Of a DNA stretch of 64,000 nt, positions 3,735 through 62,498 are shown in pieces. Within the stretch, counting starts at the first letter, position 1; each line of letters begins with the position of its first letter. The stretch lies in contig NIVC01000083.1 of assembly GCA_002269645.1 (NCBI GenBank), positions 372,001 to 436,000 of the forward strand, given 5' to 3'. This DNA comes from Macrostomum lignano (lineage: Eukaryota). Under the pieces are notes generated by a model, which worked only from the letters and a program-made list of their open reading frames with translations, was not told the DNA's origin and did not search any database. The position numbers and the translations under genes were made by a program.

Positions 3735-3852
3735 ATTTCTGATCGAATGGTGCAAGTTTGAAGAAAATCGGTTGAGCCATTTTTTCTGAAATCTATCGCA
3801 TACCTACCTACCTACCTACCCACAGACAACTCATTTTTAGTATATAGGAAGA
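3735..3852 (+). mobile_element. Possible Helitron/DINE-like non-autonomous element 3' portion
   Basis: GCAAGTTTGAAGAAAATCGGTTGAGCCATTT followed by (TACC)n and TTTTAGTATATAG resembles the layout of invertebrate non-autonomous Helitron ends. Recognised by pattern only. Confidence 0.35.
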
Positions 3853-4059
3853 ATATGCACATTTCAGCCAGTCACGCGCAGATATGACAAGACAGCGGGA
3901 GCCGAATATATGTACATTGTCAGCCTGTCCTTTTGAAATATAATTATATTTGGTTTGCGATGTGGGCCTGTCACCCAGTGTGAACCACAACTTTCAGGCA
4001 CTTTCAGTTCAACTCTATTAATTTGTAGATTTGCTTTAAAAAATAATTTAACATATTAA

Positions 4060-6148
4060 ATGGGCAACATTTGCCCCACTTTGAGTCCGGTGAGTTTTCT
4101 TAATTAATTTTAGCGCCTTGGTTTTACTAAAGAGACGAATATGAGACATTGTTTTGAGAATCTAACCTTCAGGGGGTGTGAGATGGGTATGAGATAACAC
4201 TGTGAGATAGGTATGAGATAACACTGTGAGATGGGTATGAGATACCACTGTGAGATGGGTATGAGATACCACTGTGAGATGGGTATGAGATACCACTGTG
4301 AGATGGGTATGAGATAACACTGTGAGATGGGTATGAGATACCACTGTGAGATAGGTATGATATACCACTGTGAGATGGGTATGAGATACCACTGTGAGAT
4401 AGGTATGAGATAACACTGTGACACTGTACATGTAGGTATGAAACTAGTGTCGTGGGGTATGAAATCGAGCCTACACTAAGATAGAAATGAGATAATGAAC
4501 TATATTTATATCATAATTTAATGAACTGTCGAAAATTATTGTTTTACATTCCAGCCCAGCTCTGGTCCCACAGAGCGCAGCGGTCTGATTGCCAACCAGC
4601 ACTCCGCTCCGATCAGACCCCAGCAACCGAGGGATCATCAGACTTATCAAGTCCCGGCTAGGCAGAGAGATCCCAGTGAGCACCACTACACCGCTAAATC
4701 CATTGATAACCGTAGGTCAAAGATTTCAGGTAAGAGAATGCAGCTCAAGTTTCTTGAAATCTTGCAAAACATTTTAATTTCAAACTGGACATAATTTTTC
4801 AGAAGACTCAGATTTGAATTTTTCAAGAATCGGATTGGAGAATTTGGACAAACGGTTAAATGTAAGTGCATGTGAGGTGTGGTGTGGATATGTTAATTGT
4901 CTTTTGTTAAGAAATATTAGCATGGGCTAAATTCTATGTCAATGTACACTGGCTCCTCGGGGCCTTTTCCTCTGGGCAATTAAACACACACCCAACACAC
5001 AATCCATGTACACTACGAGGTGTCCGGCTGTGGCGGTCCGGTTAATTTTGGTGGTGGGGTAAGTTAGATCTACATATGACCGAAAGGTCCGGCAAGGGAG
5101 ACTTGGCTAATTTTGAGTAATTGTGATATAGTTATATGCTGCATGTGAAGGAGAGGAAACCGACTTAGGGCGGTCCGGTTAATTTTGGTGATGGGGTAAG
5201 TTAGATACATGTGACCGAAAGGTCCGGCAAGGGAGACTTGGCTAAATTTTGGGTATTTGTGACATAGTTACATGTGAAGGAGAGGAAACTGATTTAGGGC
5301 GGTTCGGTTAATTTTGGTGGTGGGGTAAGTTAGATACATCTGAACGAAGGGTCCGACTGGTTTTTGCGGTGTTTGATTTCATGTTGGGCTTATGCTTTCG
5401 ATAGGGTGACTTAATAACGAAGTCCTGTATAGTTGGGATATGTTGTTAGATGACCTCGCGATAAGTTTAGATTTTTGACCAAATTAGGTCGACCTAGTTT
5501 AGCGGTTTCTCAACACGCGGTTCAGAATAAGCGTAAAACTGCAACCTAGACCGTTACTCCTGGGGTAAACATCACGTAAAAGGACGAAACGAGCTGTCTA
5601 CCATGTCTGACCATTCACATAAAAATAAATACGTGCACCGTCAAACAAGGAAAACGTTAAAATTAAAGTTCCCCGACGTATTAACGATCTACCTGATCGC
5701 TGAGTTTTACCTGAGTTCTACTTGTTCAACATTTGCTCATTAGGATTACTCATTTGGGGTAGTTTTACGTCGACTGTGTCTCTTGGGACATAGCCACTTC
5801 GACTTCCTCGTGCGGTTCGTGACCTTACTCCGGGAGAAACTGAGAGCGGTAGAGGTTATGCTGGTTTAGTCGAAGGATTTAGAGATGTTAGTCGAGCCGG
5901 CGATGCGGACCCTTGACGCAAGGTTCTGAGGCGGCGATTCCCCTTGCCAACGGTACTGTTGCGTCCTTCTCCTCTGTAAGTCCGCGCTAAACGATCAACG
6001 CAGCGAATTGAGACTCAGCTTGCGAAAGTCACGTTTAAAACAGGCTGACTCCTCTCATCTGCTCGTCGACCCGCCTAAACTCTCCGACCCCTGGCTCCGC
6101 CCACTCGCGGACCGACTCCGGCCCGCCGCCGACGACGAAAGCCTTACT
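4060..6148 (+). CDS. Uncharacterised ~275-aa protein, N-terminus MGNICPTLSP (possible myristoylation/palmitoylation), helical core; last two exons readable only after complementing the sequence
   Basis: Normal-orientation exons: 4060-4089 (MGNICPTLSP|gtgagt), 4555-4729 (ttccag|PSSGP...SKIS|gtaaga), 4803-4861 (ttttcag|EDSDLNFSRIGLENLDKRLN|gtaagt). Exons in the complemented reading: 5425-5611 (ttcag|DISTLYNNLLERYSNLKTGLIQLDQIAKELCAK...QMVQT|gtaagt) and 5772-6148 (tgcag|ADTENPVSVKLKEHAKHW...RRLLLSE*). Phases 0,1,0,1 all match and the total is 828 nt. The last acceptor is the least certain site. Confidence 0.7.
4184..4420. repeat. 24-bp intronic minisatellite (GTGAGATGGGTATGAGATACCACT)
   Basis: About 10 tandem copies in intron 1 of the unknown gene; explains ORFs 4110-4424 and 4162-4431. 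Confidence 0.9.
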
Positions 6149-6149
6149 G

Positions 6150-6430
6150 CTACGAACGCAACAATTATTGTTGCAACAACACAACGAAAACTACGATGAC
6201 AACGAAGACGACGAAAAGACGAAGACTAGAAAGACGACCGAGACAACGAAAACAACGAAGACGACGAAGACGACGAAGACAACGAAGACGAAGACGACGA
6301 AGAAAGTAAAAGAAGACAACGAAGACGACGAAGACAACGAAGACAACGAAGATAATGTACATGTAGAAAGGCGAGAAAGACAACGAAGACTACGAACGAA
6401 AACGACGAAGAGAAAGACAAAGGAGACAAC
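6150..6430. repeat. Degenerate 9-bp-type repeat (reads GAAGCAACA/GAAGCAGCA when reversed) just after the stop of the unknown gene
   Basis: Raw (ACAACGAAG/ACGACGAAG)n; produces ORFs 6165-6483. Confidence 0.75.
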
Positions 6431-6828
6431 GAAGACGATTCGAGACAATTAAAGTCTTCAAGACAACGTAGACAACTAACCACGAAGAAAATAAGATTTA
6501 GCCAACCTCGAACTCGTAGTCCCGATCTTCCCTCACGTGCGGGCCCCCACTAAACGATTAAAAGTGTGGCCGTTGACGAAATGTTAAAGGAAAAGTGAGC
6601 TACGCACGTAGTTACATCTGAAACCACATATAGTCGCATGTCACATGTTACATGTGAGCCCCATCGATTTTAACTAAGAACCAGCTACGTCAGTAATGTA
6701 CGTACACGTAAAACATGACAACTTAGTCAGTTTTAGCTTTTATTAACGCTTTAGTTTATCGTCTACACATGTGTACGTTCAATTTCGTCAAACAAACAAC
6801 AACAATTTGCTCCCACCCTTCGGCCCCC

Positions 6829-7443
6829 GGTATAACGCCTAGCACAATATACATGCGGCCTTTCATAGACCGATATATCATTTCACATGCGGTTATTTCA
6901 TGCGTTTAATTCCCAAGATCATTTAACATGCGGTTATTTTTTACGTACTAATTGTTCGTGTTTTTGATACTTTCTTCGTACGGCTCCGCGCGTAGTGTTT
7001 TTTAATGGCATTTTTTTCATTTTATCTTTTGCATGTACGTAGCAAATTTTTTGTTTTTATTAATCATTTTGTTTCAAAAATGCAAATGATGATAAATTGC
7101 ATGTAAAAATTTTTTCTTGAAATTATATAACGAACTTATAAGTTAAATAACAGTATTGAATCGTTTCTTTGAAGTAACTGATAAATCGCATTAAATGCAT
7201 TACCACAGCATGTAGTTACGAAAACATACGACGCGACTTTCGAACTTGTTCATATCAATTCTTAACATTCGTCTACTAACACGAACCTCCAACATAAAGG
7301 AGGCCAATGCTATCTAAATGCGGTCGGTTTCTTAAACATGCGGTCTACATTCGGTGAATTTCGCAAACATGCGGTCTACATGCGGTCGATTTCGTAAACA
7401 TGCGGCCTTAAAAGGCCGCATATGATGTGGAAGGCGTTATACC
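6829..7443. mobile_element. 615-bp MITE with perfect 12-bp TIRs and an 8-bp TSD (inside the complemented block)
   Basis: Raw TIRs GGTATAACGCCT (6829-6840) and AGGCGTTATACC (7432-7443), flanked on both sides by CGGCCCCC (6821-6828, 7444-7451). Restored reading: TIR CCATATTGCGGA, TSD GCCGGGGG. Subterminal CATGCGG repeats are present. Confidence 0.85.
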
Positions 7444-7631
7444 CGGCCCCCGTTGGGCGCCTAGTCGGGACTTAACCCGAGACGGCGACTCCCCGTGAAG
7501 GTCCCCGGATTCGGGCTCTATGGGTGTACCAACCCGGGGCTGCAGATCCGGTCCCCTTAAAACCCCGATGATTGGGTTTGGATACTATGTTCTGTGGCGG
7601 TTGGGTTTTCACCTTAGTCCCTGCCACGACT

Positions 7632-8141
7632 CTGGCTCAGGTGGGTCCGGTGGGTGGGTCGTCTGTTCAGGAGCCCTCACGCGCTTTTTGTCTTAACCTT
7701 TACTTTTACAACCCATATGATGACTTTCGGCAGGTTCTCGCCCCTTTGGGTCTTCAGAACCTTATACCGAACTGATAACCTCGCTCAGACCTTCCGAACA
7801 TAGGCTCCCGCTCAGAGGATAGTTCTCCATTTTCATCTGTTTTTGGGAGGATATCCCGACGTTCGGTGTTCCCGTAGCGGTTAGGTCGAGTTATAACCCC
7901 CGGTCCGGTTCCCCCCTCCCCGTGTTCCCCGTTCTCCTTTGGCCTGAGTCGGCCAAAAGGGGCTAAGCCCTGCTTGAAGGTTGGGTCCTGAGGTTAAGGA
8001 CAGTCTCTACTCTCGGTTCTGTGTTATCCGTCCCTCTGTTGGTCTCCTCGGTCGTCTACCTGGTTCCGTCCGTTCCACCTGGCCCGTCCATCCCGTCTCG
8101 AGTATTGAGGCTCTTAACCTTCCGAAGATTACCGGTCTATT
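7632..8141 (+). mobile_element. Probable retroelement remnant: 170-codon open frame (146 aa from ATG 7701) seen only in the complemented reading
   Basis: Complement gives MKMLGILLKAVQERGNPEVLEYGLTIGASLEGLYPRASLLSRG...QYWGPGQGGRGTRGKRKP...LLMAR*. The strand is A/G-rich with a G/R-rich stretch like gag-type ORFs; no family recognised. Confidence 0.35.
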
Positions 8142-8994
8142 TTCTTATTTTCGTATTTTCGTTCCCCTATTTTGGCGCGACCCTACGGTCGGGTCTTTTT
8201 TTTCTAACCGTCTTTCCTCCTCGTGGACTTGGGATTGGGCCCCGTGTCGGAGTCCCGACCGTAGTTGACCCGAGATGGCATGTGAAAACACTTACCAGCA
8301 GAAAGGACGTCCCGCCCACGCTGGCCCCCGAGTTCAGAGCAAGATCGGTGCGACGTCAGGTCTAGAGGTTGAGTGAGGTACATGTGGGGGGATTGGGTTC
8401 CGGCTACCGGTTTAATAACCTTACATGCTTTTTTCTTAACCCAATAAAAATCTTATCCGTGTCGGGGAGGCCCCGCCTGGGAATCTTTTAACCCGACCGG
8501 CTTCGGTCCGGTTAGCCTAACGCGTGTTGGGAATCTGTTCGGTGGTCTCTCCGTCGGTCCCATTTTTGTCAGTCTCTGGCAATCTGGCTACGTCAGTAAT
8601 GTACGTACACTTACATGTAAAACATGACAACTTAGTCAGCTTTAGCTTTTATTAACGCTTTAGCTTATCGTCTACACATGTGTAATAATCGATTTATAAT
8701 CGATTGAAAACTAAATGTAGTAAAAATATCTAAAAATATGGACTACTTTTGATAAAATAGTTATAAAGCAAGTACAGAAGTGTTTAAAAGCGTCAAAGCG
8801 TTAGACAACATTGAGATAAATTTGTAAGAGATATTAAGAGGATGATTTTTTTATTCAACGAAAAACATCAAGAGTATATACCGTCTTTCTTTGATGAGTG
8901 TTTTTAGGTACTTTATATAACATTTTAACGTGATTGTGATACACGTGTAACGTGATTGAATTGAAAACGTAGCAAGTTTTTAATGGTGTACTCA

Positions 8995-10118
8995 TGGTAT
9001 CGTGCGAGTGACTATGGTATCGTGTAAGTGACTACGGTATCGTGTGAGTGTGACTACGGTATCGTGTAAGTGACTACGGTATCGTGTAAGTGACTACGGT
9101 ATCGTGTAAGTGACTACGGTATCGTGTAAGTGACTACGGTATCGTGTAAGTGACTACGGTATCGTGTAAGTGACTACGGTATCGTGTAAGTGACTACGGT
9201 ATCGTGTGAGTGTGACTATGGTATCGTGTAAGTGACTACGGTATCGTGTGAGTGACTATGGTATCGTGTAAGTGACTACGGTATCGTGTGAGTGTGACTA
9301 CGGTATCGTGTAAGTGACTACGGTATCGTGTGAGTGTGACTATGGTATCGTGTAAGTGACTACGGTATCGTGTAAGTGACTACGGTATCGTGTAAGTGAC
9401 TACGGTATCGTGTAAGTGACTACGGTATCGTGTGAGTGTGACTACGGTATCGTGTAAGTGACTACGGTATCGTGTGAGTGTGACTATGGTATCGTGTAAG
9501 TGACTACGGTATCGTGTAAGTGACTACGGTATCGTGTAAGTGACTACGGTATCGTGTAAGTGACTACGGTATCGTGTGAGTGTGACTACGGTATCGTGTA
9601 AGTGACTACGGTATCGTGTAAGTGACTACGGTATCGTGTGAGTGTGACTACGGTATCGTGTAAGTGACTACGGTATCGTGTGAGTGTGACTACGGTATCG
9701 TGTAAGTGACTACGGTATCGTGTAAGTGACTACGGTATCGTGTGAGTGTGACTACGGTATCGTGTGAGTGTGACTACGGTATCGTGTAAGTGACTACGGT
9801 ATCGTGTAAGTGACTACGGTATCGTGTAAGTGACTACGGTATCGTGTAAGTGACTACGGTATCGTGTGAGTGTGACTACGGTATCGTGTAAGTGACTACG
9901 TTATCGTGTAAGTGACTATGGTATCGTGAGTGTGACTACGGTATCGTGTAAGTGACTACGGTATCGTGTAAGTGACTACGGTATCGTGTGAGTGTGACTA
10001 CGGTATCGTGTAAGTGACTACGGTATCGTGTAAGTGACTACGGTATCGTGTGAGTGTGACTACGGTATCGTGTAAGTGACTATGGTATCGTGTGAGTGTG
10101 ACTACGGTATCGTGTGAC
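8995..10118. repeat. 20/22-bp tandem array (raw GTGACTACGGTATCGTGTAA; restored CACTGATGCCATAGCACATT)
   Basis: About 54 near-identical units lying between the 3' ends of two convergent genes. The raw unit has 2 CpG; the restored unit has none. Confidence 0.95.
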
Positions 10119-10978
10119 TATTTTAGAATTCAGAAACGGAGACCACGATTTCGGGGACCACGTTGGAGTCGTTTTTAAACAGGTAGGGATTACGTTTAAA
10201 TGAGATAAGTTTATTTACGCGCAAACTTCGAAGGAAAACCATAATTTTTGTATAAACCATATTGTTTTCGTAGCCAAATATCAATTTAAATTTTAACAAA
10301 AATTGTATAAACTGATAAATTGATAGTGAACTTATATTCATTTTTTGTCAGTGTTGAAATCATGTCGACTTCAAACGTTTTCGTTTTGTAACGCTAATAA
10401 GCTTTTTTGTAATAAAGTAAAAAATAAAGCCTTTGTCAAGTCTTTAAAATATATATAAATTTCATGAACCAAGCTGATTTTATTGAGTAGTTATTCCAAA
10501 AAATGCATACTAATTAAGAACGTAGACACTCTCATAAAAAACATTAACACTTTAGGGTATCTTCGTAACGATTAGGTATTATACGTATACGTCAACATCA
10601 TCGTCGTCATTTCAATAACAAATATCAAAAATAATGTACACTTTCAAAGTAGTCTTTTTTTATTTCAAGGCAGTCAGTTAATTGCTACACTAGCATTTTC
10701 AAACCTCCATCCCGTTCCCCCGTCGCCAAAGATAAAGTGTGGTCGGTTAGTCTTACGAAGACCACCACATCTCCCGATCCCGAACAGATTTTCCGTTACA
10801 TGTGCGCCTCACTCCACCCCGACAAGCTAAAAAACGCATGCCCCACCCCCTTAGGAGTCGGTTATTCTTAAGAGCGCGCTTGTTAAAGATGGAGCGTCGA
10901 AGATTTTTCTAGTGTCCTCGGTGAATTTTGTTCTTTGTTATTCTTTTGTAGTCACGGATTTTAGATTAACAAAAAAGA

Positions 10979-13900
10979 AATGTTAGCGAAGGGGTACGCG
11001 AACTACCCGGGTAACTCGTAAGACAGCGTGTGACACAGTTGTAGATCGCCCGGTCGAAACGCTATTAGAAGGAGGAACAACCCGTGCAACTTTTAGGTAG
11101 CGTCTATAAGGAGGACGAATCAGCCCAGGTCGCTGCCCAGGTGTTACGGCTTCCGTGCCTACGTTAGCAGCCCACAGTCGAACAGCCGGGACACTTGCGT
11201 CTCTTAGTGCAAAATTACGAAAGAACATCATTAAAAATGTTTCGTGACAGAATCACTGTCACGTAGTGTTAATGCATGAGTATGTCTCATTCTAGCTGGC
11301 CTCTAAATGTTGGCACGTGTTTGGGCCATGACCATGACCACGTTCCCTACGTCCATATCCCTCATGCGTTCGAATGTGGCCAGCTTGAGCTTTTTAATCC
11401 TGTGAATTTCATGTGTACGTCTGTGTACGTGTTTTTATCCGTTAGCCCCATATCTACACACGTGAACGAACGAAATTTCCTATACCTTATTTAATGTTTT
11501 GCTGTGTCCTTGTGGTTCTACTGTGGTTTATATGTAAATCTAGCACTACGTCGTCGTCCTCGTTGTCATAGTTTTCCTGTTCTTTGTACGTTATAATTAA
11601 CTCTGTCGTAACGGTAATTTTATAACTACGAATAAACATTTTGTAAAAATTTATGAAGTAAATAGGTACAGATATTCATAACTGAATAACCGCCAACCGC
11701 CTCACTCCACCAACCGCCTCCTCACTTCACCAAACGCCTCACTCCATCAACCGCTTCACTCCACCAACCGCCTCCTCACTTCACCAAACGCCTCACTCCA
11801 TCAACCGCCTCACTCCACCAACCGCCTTACTCCACAAACCGCCTCCTCACTCCATCAACCGCCTCACTCCACCAACCGCCTCACTCCATCAACCGCTTCA
11901 CTCCACCAACCGCCTCCTCACTTCACCAAACGCCTCACTCCATCAACCGCTTCACTCCACCAACCGCCTCCTCACTTCACCAAACGCCTCACTCCATCAA
12001 CCGCCTCACTCCACTAACCGCCTCCTCACTTCACCAAACGCCTCACTCCATCAACCGCCTCACTCCACCAACCGCCTTACTCCACAAACCGCCTCCTCAC
12101 TCTATCAACCGCCTCACCCCACCAACCGCATCACTCCACCAACCGCCTCACCCCACCCACCGCCTCACGACCCGATGTTCCTTTTCCATACGTAAATCCC
12201 CGATTAAAACACGGCGTCAAGTCCGACTCTGCAAGCCGTACGCAACAGGATGTGGTCCCGTTTTTTATTGCTGTTACTCCACCCTGTTACTCCTTAATTG
12301 TTTGGCTCCTGACGGCTGTCGAGACCCGAGCCTATTCCTGAGGAGCAGTAACAGCGACCATAACGGCGGAGGAGGCCGTGAACTTATTGACAACGATGTT
12401 TGTTATTGTTTTAGTCAGTTAAACCAACGTTCGTCGTAGAAAAAGTGACTTACTGTTGTGTTAAAAATTTTTTCTCTTAAAGTATTACTCCCAACTGGCG
12501 TTAACTTAAGTTCGTCGTGTCATAAAATGAACGTATCAAAAAAAAAATGCTCATGTACGTTTAATAAGACATCCAAATTTTAGCCTGTACGGAAGTTCGT
12601 TTGTTTTTTCCAGCTTAATTGTAAATATTTTAATTAAAAAACTAAAGACCTATTTCGCAAAGCACAAGTGGCGTTGAATAATGGACTTGAGAGAAGCAGA
12701 GAATACCGACTTCAACATGGTCTTTATCGCGTTTATTCGTTTTGAATCGTAGTCTTTAAGTAAGTTGAGATGAGTATCATTTTGCGTGTCAAAAATTCAT
12801 CGTTTTACACAAGTATGAATGCTTTATAGCTGGTCAAGAAACGCGTAGAGCCGCTACATGAAAAGGAAGAGCAGCACGTCGTCGAAAAACTGCAGAAACT
12901 CCTTCCGGGGTTTAAGCGGAAGCAGTAGGACCTGTCCACTCTTAACTTACGCCGTAATCCGAATGTACCCTGATGACCTCCCTCGACCGTTGACTGTGAG
13001 ACCCTCCGACCGGGTCGTTGACTGTGAGACCCTCCGACCGGGTCGTTGACTCCTAGACCCTACGACCGGGTCGTTGACTGTGAGACCCTCCGACCGGGTC
13101 GTTGAACCCTAGACCCTCCGACCGGGTCGTTGACCCCTAGACCCTCCGACCGGGTCGTTGACTCCTAGACCCTCCGACCGGGTCGTTGACTCCTAGACCC
13201 GCCGACCGGGTCTTTGACTCCTAGACCGTCCGACCGGGTCGTTGACTCCTAGACCCTCCGACCGGGTCGTTGACTCCTAGACCCGCCGACCGGGTCTTTG
13301 ACTCCTAGACCGTCCGACCGGGTCGTTGACTCCTAGACCCGCCGACCGGGTCGTTGGCTGTGAGACTCTCCGACCGGGTCGTTTACTCCTAGACCCTCCG
13401 ACCGGGTCGTTGACTGTGAGACCCTCCGACCGGGTCGTTTACTCCTAGACCCTCCGACCGGGTCGTTGGCTGTGAGACTCTCCGACCGGGTCGTTTACTC
13501 CTAGACCCTCCGACCGGGTCGTTGACTCCTAGACCCTCCGACCGGGTCGTTGGCTGTGAGACTCTCCGACCGGGTCGTTTACTCCTAGACCCTCCGACCG
13601 GGTCGTTGACTGTGAGACCCTCCGACCGGGTCGTTGACTGTGAGACCCTCCGACCGGGTCGTTTACTCCTAGACCCTCCGACCGGGTCGTTGGCTGTGAG
13701 ACTCTCCGACCGGGTCGTTGACTCCTAGACCCTGGCAAAGTTAGGTGTCTCTGCCGATTCGATCGTTCCTTCGAGTTATCATTTAGAATAGTTCGCCTTA
13801 AGTTTCGCACGTAACCACATTTTAACAGACATGACGTGTCGAGGCGTCAGAGTGTCAGTATTTGTCGAACAGCTTGAGGTCAAAGCGTCTCGGCAGTCAC

Positions 13901-16900
13901 AGGTCGAGGACTCGCCGGTGCAGGCAGTTGAGGACCTTGAACAGCAGCAAAGACGGACCCTTTTTGAGCGCGTAGTGGAGCCGTTTGAGCCAGAACAGGT
14001 CGTCTGGCCTGGGCGAACCCAGGAACCAAAACTTCCGCAGGTTGTCAGCCGGCTCTCAAGCGTACAGCAGGGTCATCTGGAGGAGCCTGTACCACGGGTA
14101 GTCGTGGCTCTTCTTGACGACCGTCGCGAGCAGGACCCGCATCGCAACGTTCCGCAGCATCTTCGACATCCGGGTGAGGTGGGCCTAGACGAGTTACGGC
14201 ATCTAAACCGCTTTGTCCGACAGTTGTTTCAGCGGGTAACCGCAGTTGCCAAATCGCAGCGGACAGAGCATGCGCCGGTGAACAAGCAGAAAGAGCGCAA
14301 AAGAACGCAGGGTTTAGAGGGCCTACACTTAAGACCGCAGCGCAAAGCAGTACGCTGCCAACAACTGCCCGCACGGCACGACCTCCTTGAAGCCGTGGAC
14401 TCCCCCAAACCTGCCAAACTGACAAACTCGACTTCGTTAAAAATGTTCGAGCTTTGAAGTAACTAGACAAAATAGTAAGACAATGCGTAAAACAATGCTT
14501 CAGTACTATTTTATCAGCATCTAAGTATTTCGGTTATGGGGGTTGTAGCCTAGTGGTTAGAGCATCGGACTCATGAATTGAAGGTCGGGGGTTCGATTCC
14601 TGATCCCACTGGACTAATTTGTGTCCTTGAGCAGGAGAATTAACTCTGCATCGCTTCAGTTCACCCACAGATAGAATAACTTCTAGTATCTGTGGTTGTA
14701 ATCAATTATTATTATTCTGAGGCAAATAACACGTCGAGATGTGCCATTTCTATGATTTTTAGGCACATTTTATGTACGTTGGATATAAGATTAACATAGA
14801 ATCCTAATTTTCTTAACGAAAAGCTTCATGAATATCAATAGATTGGGTCTCCTTTCTATCAAAAGCGATAACCATTTTTGTGCCGAATAAATGAAAACCT
14901 CCATCTCCGTAGTGTATTTTTCAGTAAAAACTGCCTTCTGAAATATTCCAACAAACGTACATGCAGCTAGCCCACAGGTTCCCCGATGTGAAATTTCGAA
15001 TATTTAAAGTTTCAAGTTACGATACGAAGAAAAGCTCACGGTACAGAGTGCTATTACCTTTGGCTATTAATCAATGAATTTTGAATAATTTTACAAGGAT
15101 ACCTTTTCATCATAGCCGAGCCCCTCCAGCATTTGAGCTTCTCCGGTTGTTAGGCCGGACATCTCTTGCAGGATTATGTCCACCAGCTCGTCGGACCTCT
15201 TGCCTTGGCTCAACTCCTTCCATCTGTCGGCGCCGCCAGAAATATACTCACCGCACCGTTCCCATTCCGGCCTAGGGGTGGAGTGATTGAGTAGACTCAG
15301 TAGATTTGATTGAGTAGACTCAGTAGATTTGATTGAGTAGACTCAGTAGATTTGATTGAGTAGACTCAGTAGATTTGATTGAGTAGACTCAGTAGATTTG
15401 ATTGAGTAGACTCAGTAGATTTGATTGAGTAGACTCAGTAGATTTGATTGAGTAGACTCAGTAGATTTGATTAAGTAGACTCAGTAGATTTGATTGAGTA
15501 GACTCAGTAGATTTGATTGAGTAGACTCAGTCGATTTAATTGAGTAGACTCAGTCGATTTGATTGAGTAGACTCAGTCGATTTGATTGAGTTGACTTAGT
15601 GGATCAGACAAGGTAAACTCTAATTAATTAGTAAAGCAAGATGATTAAAGTCTTATACCTTGGAGTTGCTGTGCCCTTCAGTTGTTCAGCTTCAGTGTAG
15701 TACTGATCCCGTTGCTTCAAAACTTGTTCGTACAGATCTTGAAGGGCTCTGGAATCAAGGAGATCATGTACAAAATAGACTATACGCTGGTATAAAAGTT
15801 TATTGATTACGAATTTTTAGATTTTTGTATAATTTGGACATGTGAAACAGACAAACAATTTCATTTGCTAACTCGGGACGATTGAATTTTTATAAAAGTA
15901 CAATTGTGAGACAACACATTACCGAAACACATTTTGTTATTATGATAAGTGAGAACTCGCTAGATATTTAGCTAAAGTTCATCCTTAAAAGGATACAGCA
16001 GTTGGACTGAAGAGTGAAAAATAACTGGGAAAATTAAACTGGGGTGAAGGGTTGGGGCAATTAAACTGCGGTGAGATGGGTGGGGCAATTAAACAGGGGT
16101 GAGAGGGGTGGGGCAATTAAACTGGGGTGAGATGGGTGGGGCAATTAAACTGGGGTGAGAGGGGTGGGGCAATTAAACTGGGGTGAGAGGGGTGAGGCAA
16201 TTAAACTGGGTGGGAGGGTCGGGGCAATTAAACTGGGGTGGGAGGGGTGGGGCAATTAAACTGGGGTGAGATGGGTAAGGCAATTAAACTGGGGTGAGAT
16301 GGGTAAGGCAATTAAACTGGGGTGAGAGGGGTGGGGCAATTAAACTAGGGTGAGAGGGGTGGCGGAATTAAACTAGGGATAGACAGTCGACCAATCAGAG
16401 TCAAGGAGGAGTTAAATTGAAAACTTGAGGAGATGGAGGGGTAGAGGTCCTGAATTAACTTAAATGCATTTTAACTTTGTACAGTTGACACGATTCTTCC
16501 GTACATACTGGTATGTACACGTACATAAAAACACGCGTTACACGAATGGAAAAGGGTGAACCCAAAATTTTCTAAGATGGTTTGTGCAGTGCTAAACATA
16601 TTCCAACGAAGTGATATCTGCAATATTTGTTGTCCTATACTTGAAGCTCAGTTGTCCATTCGAGTTCGTGATCTCAGCCTCTCGCTGATCAGAAGGGCAG
16701 GTTTGATCATCGTATTTGCTGAAGCTCGATTCCGCGTCCTCAGTTTGAGTTTGACAGTTGCTGAGCTGCCTGAGATTTCCTCTGCGTCTAATTAGTCCGT
16801 TAGCATTAATTAATAAGTATAGCAGTTACCACAGCATTATTGCCTCATAGTCGATTTTCATATATTACTCATCAGTAGTGCATATATAATACAAACTCCA

Positions 16901-19900
16901 AATGCTCGTGCGAGCTACATGAGGGCGAAAATGCAACAGAATAAGCTGACCAGATTTGGGCACCGATTCAAATTTAGAGCGCCGTTGTTATATAAAGTTA
17001 TAGGCTGACTGATTATACAGTTTATACTGGTCAACGATTTGAGGAAAAATAATTTTAACGGTATTGCAATAATCCTGGATTGTTACTTCTTTCTTTTCAG
17101 GGGGTACAACAGTCCCACCTATCTCATTGTCAGGCATGTGTGCCTCAGGGGTTGGCCCTATGAACGAGCCATAGATTACTACGGTTTAGACCCCCCCCCC
17201 TGAGCTATACCTTGTACTTTGAACCTTATCTTAATTAGTTTTACACACCTGTGCTCATCAATGAGTTTATCCGTATCTCGCTTATAATTTCCGTACTCCT
17301 CCTCCATGCTGGCGAACTGGGCGGACACAGTTTCGAATTGGCGCCGCGGCACCACGTCGGAATAGTCCGCCTCCATGCGGGTGATCCGGTCGATCAGGTC
17401 GGCCTGCGACTTCTTGGCCTGCGGGTTTGGTTTTAACAAATGTAACTATGAGAATTATATTCTCTTGTTGTCAAGGGATTTCGGTGAGAAAGATAAATGG
17501 GATTGGGGATTAGAAAATTAGGATAATTAGGAGGTAGGGGACTTTAGGGGTAGATTGAAAAAAACGGGAGATTAGGGAACTCAGGGGAATGGGAAATTTT
17601 AGTGTTTGGTTTTTAGAATTTTCTGAGGATTAGAGAAGTTACAGTTTTGAGATGGTAAATTTAACGGAAAATTAGGAGGAGGTTGGGGAATTTTGGAGGA
17701 TATTGGGGATCGGAGAACTAATTTCCCCGAATTTAGGAGGAGGTTGGGGAATTTAGGAGGATATTGGGGAACTTAGGAGGATATTGGGGAATTTAGGGGT
17801 AATCAGGGAATTTAGGAGGATATTGGGGAACTTAGGAGGAGATCGGGGAATTTAGGAGGATATTGGGGAACTTAGGAGGATATTGGGGAATTTAGGAGGA
17901 GATCGGGGAATTTAGGAAGAGATCGGGGAATTTAGGAAGAGATCGGGGAATTAAGAGCCTTCCACACCTGGTTGAGTCCGATTCGCAGCTGCACAGGGTC
18001 CTCGCCGCTGTCCTCAGAATCGGCAGCCTTCTTAAAGATGCTCATGTCCTCCTGTTGCGAGCGGAGCTCGTTCATGTCGGCTACTAGCAGCTTCCTGCTG
18101 TCGGCCTCGTCTCGATAGCGTTGCTGCATATCGGTGAGTTCGGCTTTCAGAGTCTCGACCTGCTGCTCCAGATCGTGCTGCTGTTCGTGCATTTTGTCGA
18201 TTTTCTCTCTCAGGCCGAGGTTGAGAGAGCGGAGCTGCCGCATTTCTGGGGGAGAGGGCGGTAATTTGGTATGGTTGTGAGCTCAACTGTTGTATTTGTG
18301 TCCGAGTTCTCTAGATTTGAGGCAATGTCCGTGTTCTCTAGATTTGAGGCAGTGTCCGTGTTCTCTAGATTTGAGGCAGTGTCCGTGTTCTCTAGATTTG
18401 AGGCAGTGTCCGAGTTCTCTAGATTTGAGACAGTGTCCGTGTTCTCTAGATTTGAGGCAGTGTCCGTGTTCTCTAGATTTGAGGCAGTGTCCGTGTTCTC
18501 TAGATTTGAGGCATTGTCCGAGTCCTTTATATTTGAGGCGTTGTCCAAGTTCTCCAGATTTGTGGTGTCAGTATTCTCTAGATTTGAGGCATTGTCCGAG
18601 TTCTTTAGATTTGAGGCAGTGTCCGTGTTCTTTAGATTTGTCGCGGTGTCCGTGTTCTCTAGATTTGAGGCATTGTCCGTGTTCTCTAGATTTGAGGCAG
18701 TGTCCGTGTTCTCTAGATTTGAGGCATTGTCCGTGTTCTCTAGATTTGAGGCATTGTCTGAGTCCTTTATGTTTGAGGCGTTGTCCAAGTTCTCCAGATT
18801 TGTGGTGTCAGTATTCTCTAGATTTGTGGTGTCAGTATTCACTATATTTGTGGTGTCAGTATTCTCTAGATTTGTGGTGTCAGTATTCACTAGATTTGTG
18901 GCGTCAGTATTCACTATATTTGTGGTGTCAGTATTCTCTAGATTTGTGGTGTCAGTATTCACTAGATTTGTGGCGTCAGTATTCACTATATTTGTGGTGT
19001 CAAATCTCAAGATTCATTGTGTCAATGTTCGCTAGATTTGTGCTGTCAAATCTCTAGACTTGTGGTGTCACTGTTTTCTAGATTTGTGTTGTCAGTATTT
19101 TCTAGATCTTTGGTATCAGCATTCTCTAGATTTGTGTTGTCAGTATTTTCTAGATCTTTGGTATCAGCATTCTCTAGGTTTGTGTTGTCAGTATTTTCTA
19201 GATCTTTGGTATCAGCATTCTCTAGGTTTGTGTTGTCAGTATTTTCTAGATCTTTGGTATCAGCATTCTCTAGATTTGTGTTGTCAGTATTTTCTAGATC
19301 TTTGGTATCAGCATTCTCTAGATTTGTGTTGTCAGTATTTTCTAGATCTTTGGTATCAGCATTCTCTAGGTTTGTGTTGTCAGTATTTTCTAGATCTTTG
19401 GTATCAGCATTCTCTAGGTTTGTGTTGTCAGTATTTTCTAGATCTTTGGTATCAGCATTCTCTAGATTTGTGTTGTCAGTATTTTCTAGATCTTTGGTAT
19501 CAGCATTCTCTAGATTTGTGTTGTCAGTATTTTCTAGATCTTTGGTATCAGCATTCTCTAGATTTGTGTTGTCAGTATTTTCTAGATCTTTGGTATCAGC
19601 ATTCTCTAGGTTTGTGTTGTCAGTATTTTCTAGATCTTTGGTATCAGCATTCTCTAGGTTTGTGTTGTCAGTATTTTCTAGATCTTTGGTATCAGCATTC
19701 TCTAGATTTGTGTTGTCAGTATTTTCTAGATCTTTGGTATCAGCATTCTCTAGATTTGTGTTGTCAGTATTTTCTAGATCTTTGGTATCAGCATTCTCTA
19801 GATTTGTGTTGTCAGTATTTTCTAGATCTTTGGTATCAGCATTCTCTAGATTTGTGTTGTCAGTATTTTCTAGATCTTTGGTATCAGCATTCTCTAGATT

Positions 19901-21296
19901 TGTGTTGTCAGTATTTTCTAGATCTTTGGTATCAGCATTCTCTAGATTTGTGTTGTCAGTATTTTCTAGATCTTTGGTATCAGCATTCTCTAGATTTGTG
20001 TTGTCAGTATTTTCTAGATCTTTGGTATCAGCATTCTCTAGATTTGTGTTGTCAGTATTTTCTAGATCTTTGGTATCAGCATTCTCTAGATTTGTGTTGT
20101 CAGTATTTTCTAGATCTTTGGTATCAGCATTCTCTAGATTTGTGTTGTCAGTATTTTCTAGATCTTTGGTATCAGCATTCTCTAGATTTGTGTTGTCAGT
20201 ATTTTCTAGATCTTTGGTATCAGCATTCTCTAGATTTGTGTTGTCAGTATTTTCTAGATCTTTGGTATCAGCATTCTCTAGATTTGTGTTGTCAGTATTT
20301 TCTAGATCTTTGGTATCAGCATTCTCTAGATTTGTGTTGTCAAATCTCTATAGATTAGCGTTGTCAGTGTTCTCTAGATTTGTGTTGTCAAATCTCTAGA
20401 TTAGCGGTGTCCGTGCTCTCTAGAAGTGGTGGCCATCAAGATTTTCTTGTTCTTTAGAAAAGGATTTCTGTATTCTCTAGAGTGATTTCATCTGACGGTC
20501 GGTTAAAGAGTTTCATGGCAGGCAGTTCAGTGAAGAAATTCACAGGGGAGCAAGTCCGGCAGTCCGGCAGCCCAGCAGGGTGCGCACTTATATCGACTAA
20601 AAAACTGCTAAGATCGCTAATATGAGATGAGATGTGTATCAGAATCTTTAAGATGAAGCTCCCTAGTACCGCAAATCTCAGTATTAAAAACTGGGCACAT
20701 GCAAGACCGTACTGAGTTTTAGGATTTTTCAAAAGCTCACCGTCCTTCTCCTCAGCCCGGATTGCCATGATCTTCTGGTCGCACTCCTGGCTCAGCGTCC
20801 ACAGCATCTCCTTCATGGGCTCGAGTCGGCGGATCTCGTCGCGCAGATGAGCGATCATCATCTCGTACTCGCGCTTGATGGCCGCCAACAACGGCTTGTA
20901 GGTTTTAAACGCTTCGATGAGGTATTCGAACACTTCACGGTGAATCTGCAGCCGAATAGTGCTGGCAGCCACCTCCGTGACATTGTGCGACTTCAATTCG
21001 CGTTTGAGATAGCCTTCGAGCTGTTCAAGAAATTTCGGTTTCGGTAGAAGATTCGGCCGACCAGCTGATTCGTCGTCAATGACAACCAGGCGACTGTCTT
21101 TGGTGAGCAGCACCTGGCTGTCGGGCACCGTGCGGCAGGAGGCGTGAGCCGGCCAGGTGTCCAACAGTCCGCTGGCCTCGGCGCCCGAGTTCAATGGTTT
21201 GGTTAGCGAAGGCGGAGGTAAGACGTACTTTTGGCCCTGCACCTCGTAAGTCATGGACTTGTCGGCGGCTGCTGTGGCGTTGCCAGCCGCTGCCAT
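10979..21296 (-). CDS. TSNAXIP1: Translin-associated factor X-interacting protein 1-like (coiled coil plus C-terminal EF-hand-like region), ~707-737 aa
   Basis: Normal minus-strand exons: 21296-20741 (LPKPKFLEQLEGYLKREL...EVFEYLIEAFKTYKPLLAAIKREYE), 18245-17968, 17418-17249, 15748-15659 (...TATPR), 15271-15103 (PEWERC...RWKELSQGKRSDELVDIIL...GLGYDEK). Exons read as plain reverse of the given strand: 14397-13855 (VPKFLQHGTPVNNRRMTKR...VEWAYSFYDALQRY...DAFKTKDPSGSGLLDKTEF), 12928-12822 (DDEGEFGAF), optional 12394-12305, and 11189-10979 (ADKLTPDDCIRAFGIVDP...RMGKRL*). All junctions are GT-AG with matching phases. Confidence 0.9.
11690..12170. repeat. 17/20-bp intronic minisatellite (raw AACCGCCTCACTCCACC)
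   Basis: Tandem array in the last intron of TSNAXIP1, inside the complemented block. Confidence 0.9.
12985..13732. repeat. 28-bp intronic minisatellite (raw GACCCTCCGACCGGGTCGTTGACTCCTA)
   Basis: About 27 units; the exact complement (not reverse complement) of the unit at 35905-36597. Confidence 0.95.
14539..14670 (+). mobile_element. tRNA-derived SINE (A box, B box, conserved core)
   Basis: GGGGTTGTAGCCTAGTGGTTAGAGC (A box), GGTTCGATTCC (B box), then TGTGTCCTTGAGC...GCTTCAGTTCACCCA resembling the Deu/Nin-type SINE core. Related copies at 29209-29350 and 37466-37740. Normal polarity, so it bounds the complemented block on the right. Confidence 0.75.
15281..15600. repeat. 23-bp minisatellite (GATTGAGTAGACTCAGTAGATTT)
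   Basis: About 14 copies starting about 8 nt from the TSNAXIP1 acceptor at 15272-15273. Confidence 0.9.
16035..16375. repeat. 28-bp G-rich minisatellite (GGGGCAATTAAACTGGGGTGAGAGGGGT)
   Basis: About 12 diverged copies, intronic. Confidence 0.9.
17690..17952. repeat. 20-bp purine-rich minisatellite (GGGGAATTTAGGAGGATATT)
   Basis: Tandem copies in TSNAXIP1 intron 2. Confidence 0.85.
18300..20420. repeat. Compound 27/24/48-bp array filling TSNAXIP1 intron 1
   Basis: 27-bp units (TTCTCTAGATTTGAGGCAGTGTCCGTG) grade into 24-bp units and then ~27 near-identical 48-bp dimers (~19060-20340). Explains ORFs 18210-20399. Confidence 0.95.
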
Positions 21297-22548
21297 GGCT
21301 GCAGTAGCGTTTTAATGTGCTTTAAACCGACTTCAAAGTATGGGAAAATAAACGGAGCACAGCTTTTCTTAAACACTGAAATGAATAAATATTTTAACTA
21401 TTAAATTCTTTCGGAATTTTGTCTTCCTAAAAATTTTCTCAAGCAAACAGAAAGAAGTTTAATTTTCAGCAACAATCTAGTTGATGAGATATTAAAAGCA
21501 TATTTGTTATAAAAATGTACACAGAAAAACATTATACCTATAAAATTCTAAAAGTTTTCTAATTTATAATTATGACTCAACCTTCTAGAATATCAAAACA
21601 TAACTTTGCTAAAAGGTTCATGATGTACGAAGTACATTTTAAAGCAGTTTGCTATAATTTGAGTTTTGGGTTTTTGGATCTGAGTTTTTGAGTTCTTGGG
21701 TTTTCAGTGTCTCTGGTGTTCACTGAGTTTATTGCACGCAGATGTAATTAAAGTACTGTAAAAATAGAAAAGGCCATATAGCTTGTCTAATACGTATTTT
21801 ACTTATTTCCCTTGTTCTTATAACTTGACCAAGAATGATTATTTAAATGCACATGTAAATCAGGTAAAATTAAAATTTTAAAAAACATCTATAGTATAAG
21901 AATTAGATTCCGAAAATTCCAAAAAACAATAAGTTTTAATAAAATATATTAAAGAAATTAGAAATACCAGTTTCAATGCGAATCCGAATCAGACTAACCA
22001 TCAAATACTGTTGATGTTGCATTTAAGAGACTATCTTAATAGGGCTTTAATAGCTTCTATGAAATTACAATGGTTAAACTCTAACCTAAAACCCTAATTG
22101 TAAAATTTAAGGTGACAGATTTTTACTATAGGTAAAACGTAAATCGTAACTCAGGTAAAGCTGAATAAAAAGCAAATTTATGCAGTTCGAAATTTACTTT
22201 CATTGTACTAGAAACAATAGTGTGTGTCTATTTATTAGTATGAATATTTTTATTTAAATAGCAAAAATTTTATTATGCTTTAAAAGAATAAACAAACAGT
22301 ATTATACCTTACAAAGTTAAACGTGCTTTTAGATTTTGTTTTTAATAGTAAACTTACTTTTATCAAACCACTCTATTCTATGTAAAATAATTGTGCTTAT
22401 ACGACTGACGATATTTATTCAGCTAGCCACGCGCATCCAGAATCATCCTCTCACAGTCCATTTAAAATAAAACTTCACCATAAGTACGTAACGTTGACTT
22501 TTGAAGCAACGTTAATTTCATATCATTTTAGCTACATCATTACAAAAA

Positions 22549-25500
22549 ATGTTGTCCACCGACGGTGCTAATAAAAAGCCACTAATGCCACTTGCCCAGT
22601 CTGACTACATGACAAATAATACCACAACCAATACTAACAGTTCATACTGTGGCACCGGATTTGCTGATTTTCACCCAGTTAACGTTGACTTTGACAATTT
22701 TTTGCCCCAAGGTCAAAGTCAGACGTCGCCATCATCCATGTTTCCAGCTGAGTGGAATGGCCATGCTCAGGAAGGCTCTATCTTTTCAGATGCAGTTTTT
22801 AATCATGTTGGTAATGGTAACTACCCACAGCCACAGGTCAGCAGCTCAAGTTTCATCATGAGCTCCACTAAGCCAGGTCAATATGGTTGCATAGATTTTG
22901 AATCTCTTCAGCAGAAGATTTCTCTAAAGAAGCAATCATTAGACATTCTTCAGGGTGTTATCCCTGACCCTCTTGGTCTAGAAGCAAATCATGAAAAAAA
23001 GGCATATATGACCAACACAGAGCGCATTCAAGTGCCTTCTTCTGACCATGTAGCAGAAATTGTTGGAAAAAATGGTAATTATTTTTTATTATGATTTTTG
23101 AGCTTTTGGTTCTAGATCTGAGATGATTTCTTTGGTTTTTCATTTGTATAAATTTATTAGACCTAATAATATTAAATTAAACTATTAGGCCTAGTTAATT
23201 TGTATTTTGCATTATTGTTCTAAAATAAGCTTTTGTAACTTATGCTTAAAATAGACTAATAGACCTAAGTCTTAAACAGACATGTGCAACCTCCAAAATT
23301 CAGTTGGCCATGCAACTTAGTATTAACAAAAATGTGACATAGTTTTTGGCTAAAAATGCGACTTACATGTAAAAAACTCTAAAGGAAAATTACCGCAACG
23401 TTGGGTAAATGGCAGGAGTAACTCTGACTGTCTTATTAAGCCAAAATGCCTTATCAGCTACTTTGTACTACTACTTGTGTGTTTTTTTTTGGGTGGGCAT
23501 TTTTGCGACTTCCTTGGTTGGCTGCCAAATCAGTCGGCCAGGTTGGCCAACTCGGTTGACTGTTGTGCATGTATGGTCTAAAATAAAGAATTTTTATTTA
23601 TAAATTTAGATAAATAAGTGCTAGCCTGCTATACTTAGGCCTAGCTACCTAGTTAAGTTTATTACTTTGCTTGCATTGTTTTATCATTTAATAAATAAAA
23701 ATATATTATTATTTGTCTATAATTTTATTTTTAGGCAGTGCTTATCTCCATGGTACTATAGAAATAATTTCTATCTTATTCCAACAATACTGTGGGAATA
23801 ATTTTCTGCTTATCCATATGGCACACTGATGAGATAGCTGCCCTATCTTTTACATATGCCATGGGAATAATTTTCTGCTTATCCGCATGGGACACTGACA
23901 AGAAAGCTGCCCTATATTCTATATATGCCGTGAGAATAATTTTCTGCTTATCCGCACGGCACACTGACGAGATAGTCGCCATATCTTCTATATATATATA
24001 TGCTATACCTGAATAGTATATAGCTTTTTGAAAGGGAATTTAAATTAAAGATACTAAAAAGCTGTTGATCTGGATCAACACCATGACCAGCATTTTTTTG
24101 CATAAAAAAGCCATTAAATCTTTACTTCTATTAAACAAATTATCAAGCAAAGTTGTTATATTGCACTTAAACCATAAGTACTAAACTAAATTATTCCCAC
24201 GGCATATGTAAAAGATGGGCCAACTATTTTGTCAGTATGCTATGCAGATAAGCAGAAAATTATTCCTATGGTACCATGGGGATAAGCACTGCCTTATTTT
24301 TATTTGATCAATTTTTAAATTAGATACTTGATAATGAATCTAATAGAGTTTTTACATAATTTATTATTAAAAAAATATTCCTTGAAGTTTTAGTAGCAAT
24401 CTTTCTTTATCCCTCTGCCTTTTCCTAATTCTAAGAATGTATTTTTCTAATTAAAAATGATTTTTTTCAATTAGGCCTATTGAAATCTTATTGGCATTCT
24501 TTTGTTTTATAATCCCTAAGCAACCATATTCAAACTGCTCAACTACCAAAATAGGTGTGTACAGTTGGTGTGCATCACTCCAAAGCAATAGTGTGCATGT
24601 ATATTTAGCATGCACTTCATAGAATCATGCAGAAAAAATTGTGTGAAGTAAAAAAAGATACAAAAATATTCATTTTAAGCAAAAAATTCAAGCTTTCTAG
24701 GGTTTTTAAGTTCATAATAAAATATTTAAACAAATATTTGTGTGTATCAATTTTCAGCAGGGAATAAATAGTATTGTCAAAAAAGCAGAAAAATTAACCA
24801 AATTATTTTTAAAAAAAAGTTTCATTATGCAATACAAAAAAGGTTTTTATTATCACAATGTGAAAAAGGTCATTTATTGTCATAACACCATCATAGTTTT
24901 AAGAATAGGTGTGCACTCAAGTTTTTTTAGTGTGCATTTGCAATTATTCAATTTTTGTTTGCGTATGCACTTAGCATGATCTAGACTATGGCCAAGTAGG
25001 TCCAATTTTGTATCACAATCCCCATTAAAAAAGAGTCAACATTGATATAGGACATTGACTCTAGTATAACTAAAAATTACATTTCATATTTTTTTCTTTG
25101 AAACTCACTTCCAAGTCAATTTAAATTGTCATTACAATCCATTGAAACATAGGCGTAGCATAGTTACAGAAGTATGTAGCTTATATTCACTTTTGTTATG
25201 CAATCATTTAAATTATAAAATTATATGTAGATGATTGCAAGATGAAGCTGAACTCACTTTCATCTTATGATCACCCCAAAATATAAAATGTACTTCCATT
25301 TAACTAGGGGATCATAAGGCAAAAATGAGTGGGGGCTACCTAGAATTGGTTTGCAGTTTTTGCTGCTTTTGGTGGCTTTGCAGCTTTCTATTTGTGGACA
25401 TTATAGAGGCTAAAATGATAGGAAAAGCCAGGATATATAATCTTCTAGCTTAACATAAATAGCCTGAAAGTGTTAATAAGCCAATGTTGCATTTTGTTAT

Positions 25501-38945: not shown

Positions 38946-38977
38946 TAGCATGATAAGGCATTTATTTTAGCATTATA

Positions 38978-49115: not shown

Positions 49116-62498
<13,383 letters not shown>

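What the first reader, a model, noticed from the sequence alone, without database searches (positions are those of the whole stretch)
5015..14500. A ~9.5-kb block is complemented in place ('mirror' DNA), not inverted
Seen: neither real strand of this block encodes anything sensible. Swapping A<->T and C<->G without reversing yields canonical exons, GT-AG sites, a MITE and normal-looking intron composition. Exons, introns and repeats are all affected, as one contiguous block. Established: polymerases copy antiparallel, so inversions and template switches give reverse complements, never an in-place complement. Inference: most likely a processing error, for example a gap-fill or patch segment in lower case that was reversed but not complemented, or a deliberate edit. 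If raw reads supported it, the finding would be extraordinary. Either way it hides 5-6 exons from standard annotation.
Basis: partly seen in the sequence, partly recalled or inferred. Interest (0 to 1): 0.9.

Follow-up and report, generated by a model that had tools for sequence, protein, structure and literature searches.

The report
Complemented-in-place block: public assembly error
A 9,521-base stretch of the deposited Macrostomum lignano (flatworm) reference genome has every base swapped for its complement without being reversed; this is almost certainly a data-processing error, and it hides five exons of two genes from every standard tool.

Summary
As given, it matches nothing on either strand. 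After complementing base by base, without reversing, it is 99.75-100% identical to a paralogous contig of the same assembly. That is the same identity as the untouched flanks, and there is no scar at either junction.

The window is Macrostomum lignano assembly Mlig_3_7 (GCA_002269645.1), contig NIVC01000083.1, positions 372001-436000. The deposited record is 100.000% identical to the window as given over 26,170 bp, including nearly all of the block. So the error sits in the public record and was not planted in this window.

Complementing restores five coding exons with canonical AG/GT sites:
- the last three exons of a TSNAXIP1-like/EF-hand gene, which GenBank annotates here as a "partial" 413-aa protein against 707 aa in the two paralogs;
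- the last two exons of a 275-aa gene, for which no copy from this contig was found among the deposited proteins.

Collinearity with both flanking genes, with a tandem repeat crossing the left junction and with a sea-cucumber orthologue shows complement-in-place, not reverse-in-place. A protein from the older ML2 assembly carries this copy's allele with an intact C-terminus.

Verdict: a processing artefact, not biology. The pipeline step responsible is unknown, and raw reads could not be checked.

The parts
5015..14535 (.). The block: every base is the Watson-Crick complement of the true base, with order unchanged. It equals NIVC01000083.1:377015-386535 and is 9,521 bp long.
   Evidence: Base-by-base comparison with paralog contig L003 switches from identity to complement at 5014|5015 and back at 14535|14536. 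The alignment is continuous only after complementing. The window as given is identical to the deposited contig L004.
4938..5355 (+). A 65/129-bp tandem repeat that crosses the left junction. The copy at 4938-5014 has normal polarity and the copies at 5015-5355 are complemented.
   Evidence: The flank copy aligns to the complemented block with score 44. The maximum for shuffled flank sequences is 23, and the as-given, reverse-complement and reversed block score 14-18. TRF extends the array across the junction only in the complemented version.
4060..4861 (+). Exons 1-3 of the left gene, readable as given: 4060-4089, 4555-4729 and 4803-4861. The gene is a paralog of PAA91649.1 BOX15_Mlig006240g1 (275 aa, no Pfam domain).
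   Evidence: The exon chain was derived from L003 and is the only canonical GT-AG solution. The product is exactly PAA91649.1. These exons are found exactly in the window.
5425..5611 (+). Exon 4 of the left gene, readable only after complementing.
   Evidence: The L003 exon matches the restored sequence exactly and is absent from the sequence as given. tblastn aligns residues 87-150 only in the restored sequence.
5772..6148 (+). Exon 5 (last, including the stop codon) of the left gene, readable only after complementing.
   Evidence: Exact match to the L003 exon in the restored sequence only; tblastn.
15103..21296 (-). Exons of the TSNAXIP1-like/EF-hand gene (Mlig004790.g3) that are readable as given, covering residues 1-422. 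The GenBank CDS PAA91620.1 ('partial', 413 aa) spans 21296-15127.
   Evidence: tblastn of P0056; P0060 sequence and locus; Pfam TSNAXIP1_N, 1.5e-26.
13855..14397 (-). Hidden exon of the TSNAXIP1-like gene (residues ~423-602, containing the EF-hand pair), readable only after complementing.
   Evidence: tblastn 99.5% in the restored sequence only. Acceptor cag| and donor |gtgag. EF-hand match to calmodulin, E = 3e-5. Collinear tblastx hits to the Apostichopus japonicus orthologous locus.
12822..12928 (-). Hidden exon of the TSNAXIP1-like gene (residues 603-638).
   Evidence: tblastn 100% in the restored sequence only; ccag| ... |gtaagt.
10979..11189 (-). Hidden last exon of the TSNAXIP1-like gene (residues 638-707 plus the stop codon).
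   Evidence: tblastn 100% in the restored sequence only; acceptor cacag| and TAA stop.
12988..13733 (.). A 28-bp minisatellite inside the block. It matches the normal-polarity array at 35890-36606 only after complementing, which makes it an in-window internal control.
   Evidence: blastn of the complemented block against the rest of the window gives 26 HSPs, the best 88.5% over 714 bp. The block as given has no hit inside it. TRF.
8996..10115 (.). A 20-bp minisatellite (about 55 copies) inside the block; it is the main site of length differences from the paralog.
   Evidence: TRF; megablast.
14539..14608 (+). A tRNA-like (SINE-like) element of normal polarity that starts 4 bp after the right junction. 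It marks the first unaffected sequence.
   Evidence: Rfam tRNA, 31.4 bits. A related copy lies at 37505-37563 on the minus strand. It is identical to the paralog as given.

Best explanation
The block is a data-processing artefact in the deposited Mlig_3_7 assembly of Macrostomum lignano (GCA_002269645.1, contig NIVC01000083.1, positions 377015-386535).

Shown: an A<->T, C<->G substitution was applied to a coordinate-defined interval of an already contiguous sequence without reversing it. Equivalently, an inverted interval was reversed without being complemented. The true sequence is the in-place complement. It carries the last two exons of a 275-aa gene on the + strand and the last three exons of a 707-aa TSNAXIP1-like/EF-hand gene on the - strand.

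Consequence: because the string no longer resembles any real strand, reads, transcripts and proteins cannot align to it. The deposited annotation therefore truncates one gene, and no copy of the other from this contig was found among the deposited proteins.

Inferred: that no raw read supports the deposited string, and that the change happened after consensus and polishing. The step responsible in the Canu 1.4 / Pilon 1.20 / SSPACE 3.0 / submission pipeline is unknown.
For: 1. The switch is exact and single-base at both ends. Given = paralog up to 5014, given = complement of paralog for 5015-14535, and given = paralog from 14536, with no inserted, deleted or duplicated base at either junction.
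2. Unique segments of the complemented block are 99.75-100% identical to paralog g2, the same as the flanks at 99.7-99.9%. As given, the block has no hit on either strand. The same holds against the more distant paralog g1.
3. The window as given equals the deposited contig at 26,170 of 26,170 bases, including positions 5127-14535 of the block.
4. Complementing restores five exons with canonical splice sites and full-length proteins. As given, P0056 aligns only for residues 1-422 and the 275-aa protein only for residues 3-88.
5. Three lines show complement-in-place rather than reverse-in-place. A tandem repeat continues in register across the left junction. Both flanking genes continue into the adjacent end of the block. 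Exon order matches the sea-cucumber orthologue.
6. GenBank annotates this copy as 'partial', 413 aa, ending 24 nt before the donor site of the last exon outside the block. Paralogs g1 and g2 are 707 aa.
7. The restored protein has Y17/R55/V688. That combination is carried by UniProt A0A1I8HM83, predicted from the older ML2 assembly with a complete C-terminus.
8. From established knowledge, templated synthesis is antiparallel, so no known mutational process turns a sequence into its non-reversed complement.
9. Polarity statistics single out this block alone in the window and in none of the paralog loci.
Against: - Raw PacBio and Illumina reads could not be inspected, so the absence of read support is inferred, not shown.
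- No step of the published pipeline is known to me to produce complement-only output.
- The interval length (9,521 bp) and offsets are not round numbers and are not byte-aligned. They give no clue to a buffer or chunk bug.
- The ML2 evidence rests on only three diagnostic residues.
- A truncated gene model would also be expected if the block were physically real.
Confidence: 0.97

Rival explanations
1. The DV1 worm genome physically carries this sequence: one of the three paralogous copies suffered a real event that replaced 9.5 kb by its non-reversed complement.
For: The string is in the deposited assembly, and the gene model there is truncated, as it would also be if the sequence were real. 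Raw reads were not checked.
Against: - No known polymerase or repair pathway makes a parallel-strand copy (established knowledge).
- The relation is exact over 9,521 bases, with the same 0.1-0.25% divergence from the paralog as the flanks and no junction scars.
- The older ML2 assembly of the same line yields three full-length proteins, one with this copy's allele combination.
Confidence: 0.01
3. The block is an ordinary inversion, a foreign insertion or merely divergent sequence, and the apparent 'complement' signal comes from odd composition.
For: The block is rich in tandem repeats, which can distort dinucleotide statistics.
Against: - blastn searches both strands, and the block as given finds nothing in either paralog, so it is neither collinear nor inverted.
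- The complemented block is collinear at 99.75-100% and restores five exons.
Confidence: 0.005

Closest known systems
Inversion misassembly or a true chromosomal inversion
   Same: A contiguous block with two sharp breakpoints inside otherwise collinear sequence. It interrupts the genes that cross the breakpoints.
   Different: An inversion is the reverse complement, so it aligns on the minus strand and its exons stay readable. This block aligns on neither strand. Exon order and strand stay collinear with the flanks once it is complemented.
Strand-flip errors in SNP or genotype data (alleles reported on the opposite strand at an unchanged position)
   Same: A symbol-wise complement with the coordinate order kept; a pure bookkeeping error with no physical counterpart.
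   Different: Strand flips affect isolated sites in variant tables. This error affects 9,521 consecutive bases of a deposited assembly contig. The comparison is from my own knowledge and was not tested here.
Fold-back or palindromic artefacts of long-read sequencing (for example PacBio missed-adapter chimeras)
   Same: Strand-related artefacts of the same read technology that was used for this assembly.
   Different: Those produce reverse-complement duplications next to the original. This block has no duplication and no reverse-complement relation.
Mirror-image (L-) DNA and parallel-stranded DNA
   Same: A hypothetical parallel-strand copy would read as a non-reversed complement.
   Different: Chirality is not represented in a sequence file, and parallel-stranded duplexes are in-vitro constructs that are not copied by cellular polymerases (established knowledge). 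Nothing here points to either.
TSNAXIP1 (translin-associated factor X-interacting protein 1) family genes
   Same: The gene partly hidden by the block has the TSNAXIP1_N domain (PF15739, 1.5e-26). It is collinear with the annotated Apostichopus japonicus TSNAXIP1-like locus.
   Different: The flatworm protein also carries a C-terminal EF-hand pair. That exon is one of those hidden in this copy.

Membership tests
In-place (symbol-wise) complement artefact | Every base of the block is the complement of the homologous base, in the same order | tested here: met
   The junction regions are shown base by base. Unique segments are 99.75-100% identical to paralog g2 after complementing and have no hit as given.
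In-place (symbol-wise) complement artefact | Flanks unchanged and collinear, with no gain, loss or duplication of bases at the junctions | tested here: met
   The alignment runs continuously through 5014|5015 and 14535|14536 in the complemented version.
In-place (symbol-wise) complement artefact | Complementing, not reversing, restores continuity with the flanking features | tested here: met
   The tandem repeat continues in register across the left junction. The left gene continues on the + strand at the left end and the TSNAXIP1-like gene on the - strand at the right end. Exon order matches the sea-cucumber locus.
In-place (symbol-wise) complement artefact | The deposited string is not supported by raw sequencing reads | not testable with these tools
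   No read archive is accessible. Indirect evidence only: an ML2-derived protein with this allele is intact, and the GenBank gene model stops before the block.
Chromosomal inversion or inversion misassembly | The block equals the reverse complement of the ancestral or paralogous arrangement | tested here: not met
   blastn on both strands finds no hit for the block as given against L003 or L005.
Edit confined to this window (planted control) | The public record differs from the window within the block | tested here: not met
   Window 5127-31296 matches NIVC01000083.1:377127-403296 at 26,170 of 26,170 bases.
TSNAXIP1 family (the gene affected) | TSNAXIP1_N domain (PF15739) above Pfam's gathering score | tested here: met
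   93.3 bits against a cut-off of 27 for P0056. The window's exon at 20742-21296 hits 52 PF15739 proteins.

The most novel reading that the evidence does not exclude
The most novel reading not excluded is that the Macrostomum lignano DV1 genome really contains a 9.5-kb segment that is the non-reversed complement of its paralogs. That would imply an unknown process able to synthesise or ligate DNA in parallel polarity. I could not inspect raw reads, so it is not formally excluded.
Probability: 0.01. Interest if true: 1.

Novelty: not a real feature. Interest (0 to 1): 0.3.

Why it matters
Mlig_3_7 is the working reference genome for a regeneration and transgenesis model flatworm. At this locus 9.5 kb of it cannot be read by any aligner, gene finder or read mapper.

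- Mlig004790.g3 is deposited as a 413-aa partial protein instead of 707 aa.
- No copy of the third Mlig006240-type gene was found among the deposited proteins.
- Any copy-number or paralog analysis will count two copies here where there are three. A 2023 study of this assembly reports many 2-copy blocks with 3-fold read coverage (PMC10733133). Linking that to errors of this kind is my speculation.

A complement-only error is invisible to ordinary both-strand searches. It is nonetheless easy to detect with a strand-polarity likelihood ratio, which found this block to within about 300 bp from composition alone. It can also be found by aligning the complement of each contig back to the assembly. 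If one such block exists, the assembly, and others made with similar pipelines, deserve a scan.

Tried and rejected
- A word-indexed protein search with the hidden EF-hand exon found nothing. The search with the flanking exon missed the species' own proteins. Only a concatenated exon query retrieved P0056, so those early negatives reflected the index and were not evidence.
- Exact-ORF look-ups meant to find raw-read (Logan) contigs failed for the block ORF and also for a flank control. They are uninformative.
- A brute-force exon chaining run timed out. Restricting it to consensus splice sites gave one solution, which was verified as PAA91649.1.
- A literature search for complement-without-reversal artefacts found only designed control sequences, not assembly errors.
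- The assembly paper's methods and a later paper on this assembly do not identify a responsible step.
- I considered a buffer or 2-bit-packing bug. I set it aside because neither the start offset (377,014 bases) nor the length (9,521) is byte-aligned or round.
- I considered a misplaced separate contig. I rejected it because the junctions are seamless and in register.
- Reverse-in-place was rejected on collinearity.
- Other negative-LLR bins (43.0, 55.5 and 57.0 kb) are short, low-complexity, or positive at order 3.
Full report
**1. The observation**

The window is all upper case and has no Ns.

- **Dinucleotides.** CpG o/e is 1.29 inside and 0.65 outside, GpC 0.64 against 1.15, CA 0.78 against 1.14, and AC 1.25 against 0.83.
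- **Likelihood ratio.** I compared the sequence as given with its complement under a Markov model trained on both strands of 16-64 kb. The log-likelihood ratio is negative in 18 of 19 500-bp bins of the block and in 10 of 108 bins elsewhere. The block sums to -421 nats.
- **Change point.** A composition-only change point falls at 5152-14242. The next most negative segment in the window reaches only -37 nats and is a low-complexity repeat.
- **Controls.** The same scan is positive in every 1-kb bin of both paralog loci.

**2. Internal controls in the window**

The block as given has no similarity to the rest of the window. After complementing, its 28-bp minisatellite (12988-13733) matches the normal array at 35890-36606, with a best alignment of 88.5% over 714 bp among 26 HSPs.

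A 65/129-bp tandem repeat crosses the left junction. The flank copy (4938-5014) aligns to the complemented block with score 44. Shuffled flank sequences score at most 23, and the as-given, reverse-complement and reversed versions of the block score 14-18.

**3. What is encoded**

- **Hidden EF-hand exon.** The complemented block has a 218-codon open frame at 13804-14457 on the minus strand. It contains an EF-hand pair (Pfam 8.8e-6; calmodulin chains at 3e-5). The equally long frame in the sequence as given hits nothing.
- **Orthologue collinearity.** The right flank carries TSNAXIP1_N exons on the minus strand. In a tblastx against the Apostichopus japonicus TSNAXIP1-like locus, nine flank exon pieces are collinear, and the two pieces from the complemented block (14397-14293 and 14247-14083) continue the series. 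The block as given gives only low-complexity noise.

**4. Source of the window**

A concatenated exon peptide retrieved Macrostomum lignano PAA91648.1 (BOX15_Mlig004790g2, 707 aa) at 97% identity. Its cluster holds three Mlig_3_7 copies:

| Copy | Length | Contig |
|---|---|---|
| g1 | 707 aa | NIVC01001635.1 |
| g2 | 707 aa | NIVC01000082.1 |
| g3 | 'partial', 413 aa | NIVC01000083.1 |

Window 5127-31296 as given is identical to NIVC01000083.1:377127-403296 at 26,170 of 26,170 bases with no gaps. Window position p therefore equals contig position 372000 + p, and the block is contig 377015-386535. The complemented block is in the deposited public record.

**5. Exact anatomy**

Against the g2 contig, the window as given aligns over 3849-5014 (99.8%) and again from 14536. 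With the block complemented the alignment is continuous. Base by base, the relation switches from identity to complement at 5014|5015 and back at 14535|14536, with no extra or missing base.

Unique segments of the complemented block are 99.75-100% identical to g2, against 99.7-99.9% for the flanks. As given they have no hit on either strand. The same pattern holds against the roughly 95%-identical g1 copy.

**6. Genes affected**

*Left gene (+ strand).*
- A unique canonical GT-AG exon chain in the g2 contig gives a 275-aa product that is exactly PAA91649.1.
- In the window, exons 1-3 (4060-4089, 4555-4729, 4803-4861) are intact.
- Exons 4-5 (5425-5611, 5772-6148) exist only after complementing.
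- No copy from this contig appears in that protein's 90% cluster.

*TSNAXIP1-like/EF-hand gene (- strand).*
- Residues 1-422 are encoded as given (21296-15103).
- The remaining residues (about 423-707) lie in the hidden exons 14397-13855, 12928-12822 and 11189-10979. All three have canonical acceptors and donors after complementing.
- The GenBank CDS for this copy ends at window 15127. That is 24 nt before the donor site of the last readable exon and 592 nt before the block.

**7. Complement-in-place or reverse-in-place**

The two operations are reverse complements of each other, so only context can separate them. Three observations fit complement-in-place only:
- Each flanking gene continues into the adjacent end of the block on its own strand.
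- The left tandem repeat continues in register.
- The alignment to both paralogs is collinear through both junctions.

**8. Artefact or biology**

Templated DNA synthesis is antiparallel, so no known process converts a sequence into its non-reversed complement (established knowledge). Several further points argue for an artefact.

- **Exactness.** The relation is exact and scar-free, and the block carries no extra divergence.
- **Independent assembly.** The restored g3 protein differs from g2 only by F17Y, which gives the combination Y17/R55/V688. UniProt A0A1I8HM83, from the older ML2 assembly, has exactly that combination with a complete C-terminus. ML2 also yields g1-like and g2-like full-length proteins.
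- **Timing (weak inference).** Indel and mismatch rates against g2 are the same inside and outside the block, and the five exons have no frameshift. This suggests the change happened after consensus and polishing.
- **Pipeline.** The published pipeline is Canu 1.4, Pilon 1.20 and SSPACE 3.0, followed by filtering for submission (PMC5730564). I could not identify the responsible step.
- **Interval size.** The interval is not round and not byte-aligned. That argues for a coordinate-defined string operation rather than a buffer fault (inference).

**9. Limits**

- Raw reads were not available.
- Exact-ORF look-ups that might have reached read-level assemblies failed for a control as well.
- Only about 150 kb of this assembly was examined: the window plus L003 and L005. 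How common such blocks are is unknown.
Inverted repeats survive complementing.

**10. Verdict**

It is not a biological feature. Its value is as a correction to a model-organism reference and as a kind of assembly error that standard checks do not catch.

Noticed in passing
window 14539-14608 (+); related copy 37505-37563 (-): A tRNA-like element (Rfam tRNA 31.4 bits; ARAGORN calls no tRNA) begins 4 bp after the right junction of the block. A second copy, 80% identical, lies elsewhere in the window. It is probably a tRNA-derived SINE. Its position next to the junction may be coincidence.
   Followed up: partly
window 15103-15127 (-): The GenBank CDS PAA91620.1 stops 24 nt short of the exon's donor site rather than at it. 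That would fit a genome-guided transcript model fading out where junction-spanning RNA-seq reads could not map end to end into the complemented block.
   Followed up: partly
L005 (NIVC01001635.1) 24704-25255: In the g1 paralog the left gene is annotated as only 129 aa (PAA65609.1), against 275 aa in g2. That locus has normal polarity, so this is a separate annotation or divergence issue.
   Followed up: no
window 24000-27000 and 38000-41000: These AT-rich stretches (GC about 0.28-0.32) have almost no CpG (o/e 0.02-0.14) while GpC o/e is about 1.7-1.9. CpG depletion here is far stronger than in the rest of the window.
   Followed up: no
window 18.3-20.4 kb, 42.9-43.6 kb, 46.8-48.7 kb, 59.1-60.0 kb, 62.4-64.0 kb: Very long tandem or low-complexity arrays give open frames of hundreds of codons in several frames on both strands. 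They are also where the three paralogous copies differ most in length.
   Followed up: partly
window 22516-30002 (+), 36794-37432 (-), 55127-57485 (+): Other genes in the window, all with normal polarity: a KH-domain gene (annotated as 566 aa on this contig), a TMEM33/Pom33 exon (1.1e-24), and cytosolic carboxypeptidase (M14) exons.
   Followed up: partly
window 6826-6851 and 7421-7446: A 26-nt inverted repeat (81% complementary) with arms 569 nt apart inside the block. Inverted repeats are preserved by complementing.
   Followed up: no
tool behaviour: The word-indexed protein search did not return PAA91648.1 for two queries that this protein contains at about 99-100% identity. It did return it for a longer concatenated query. 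Negative results from that tool should not be read as absence.
   Followed up: yes
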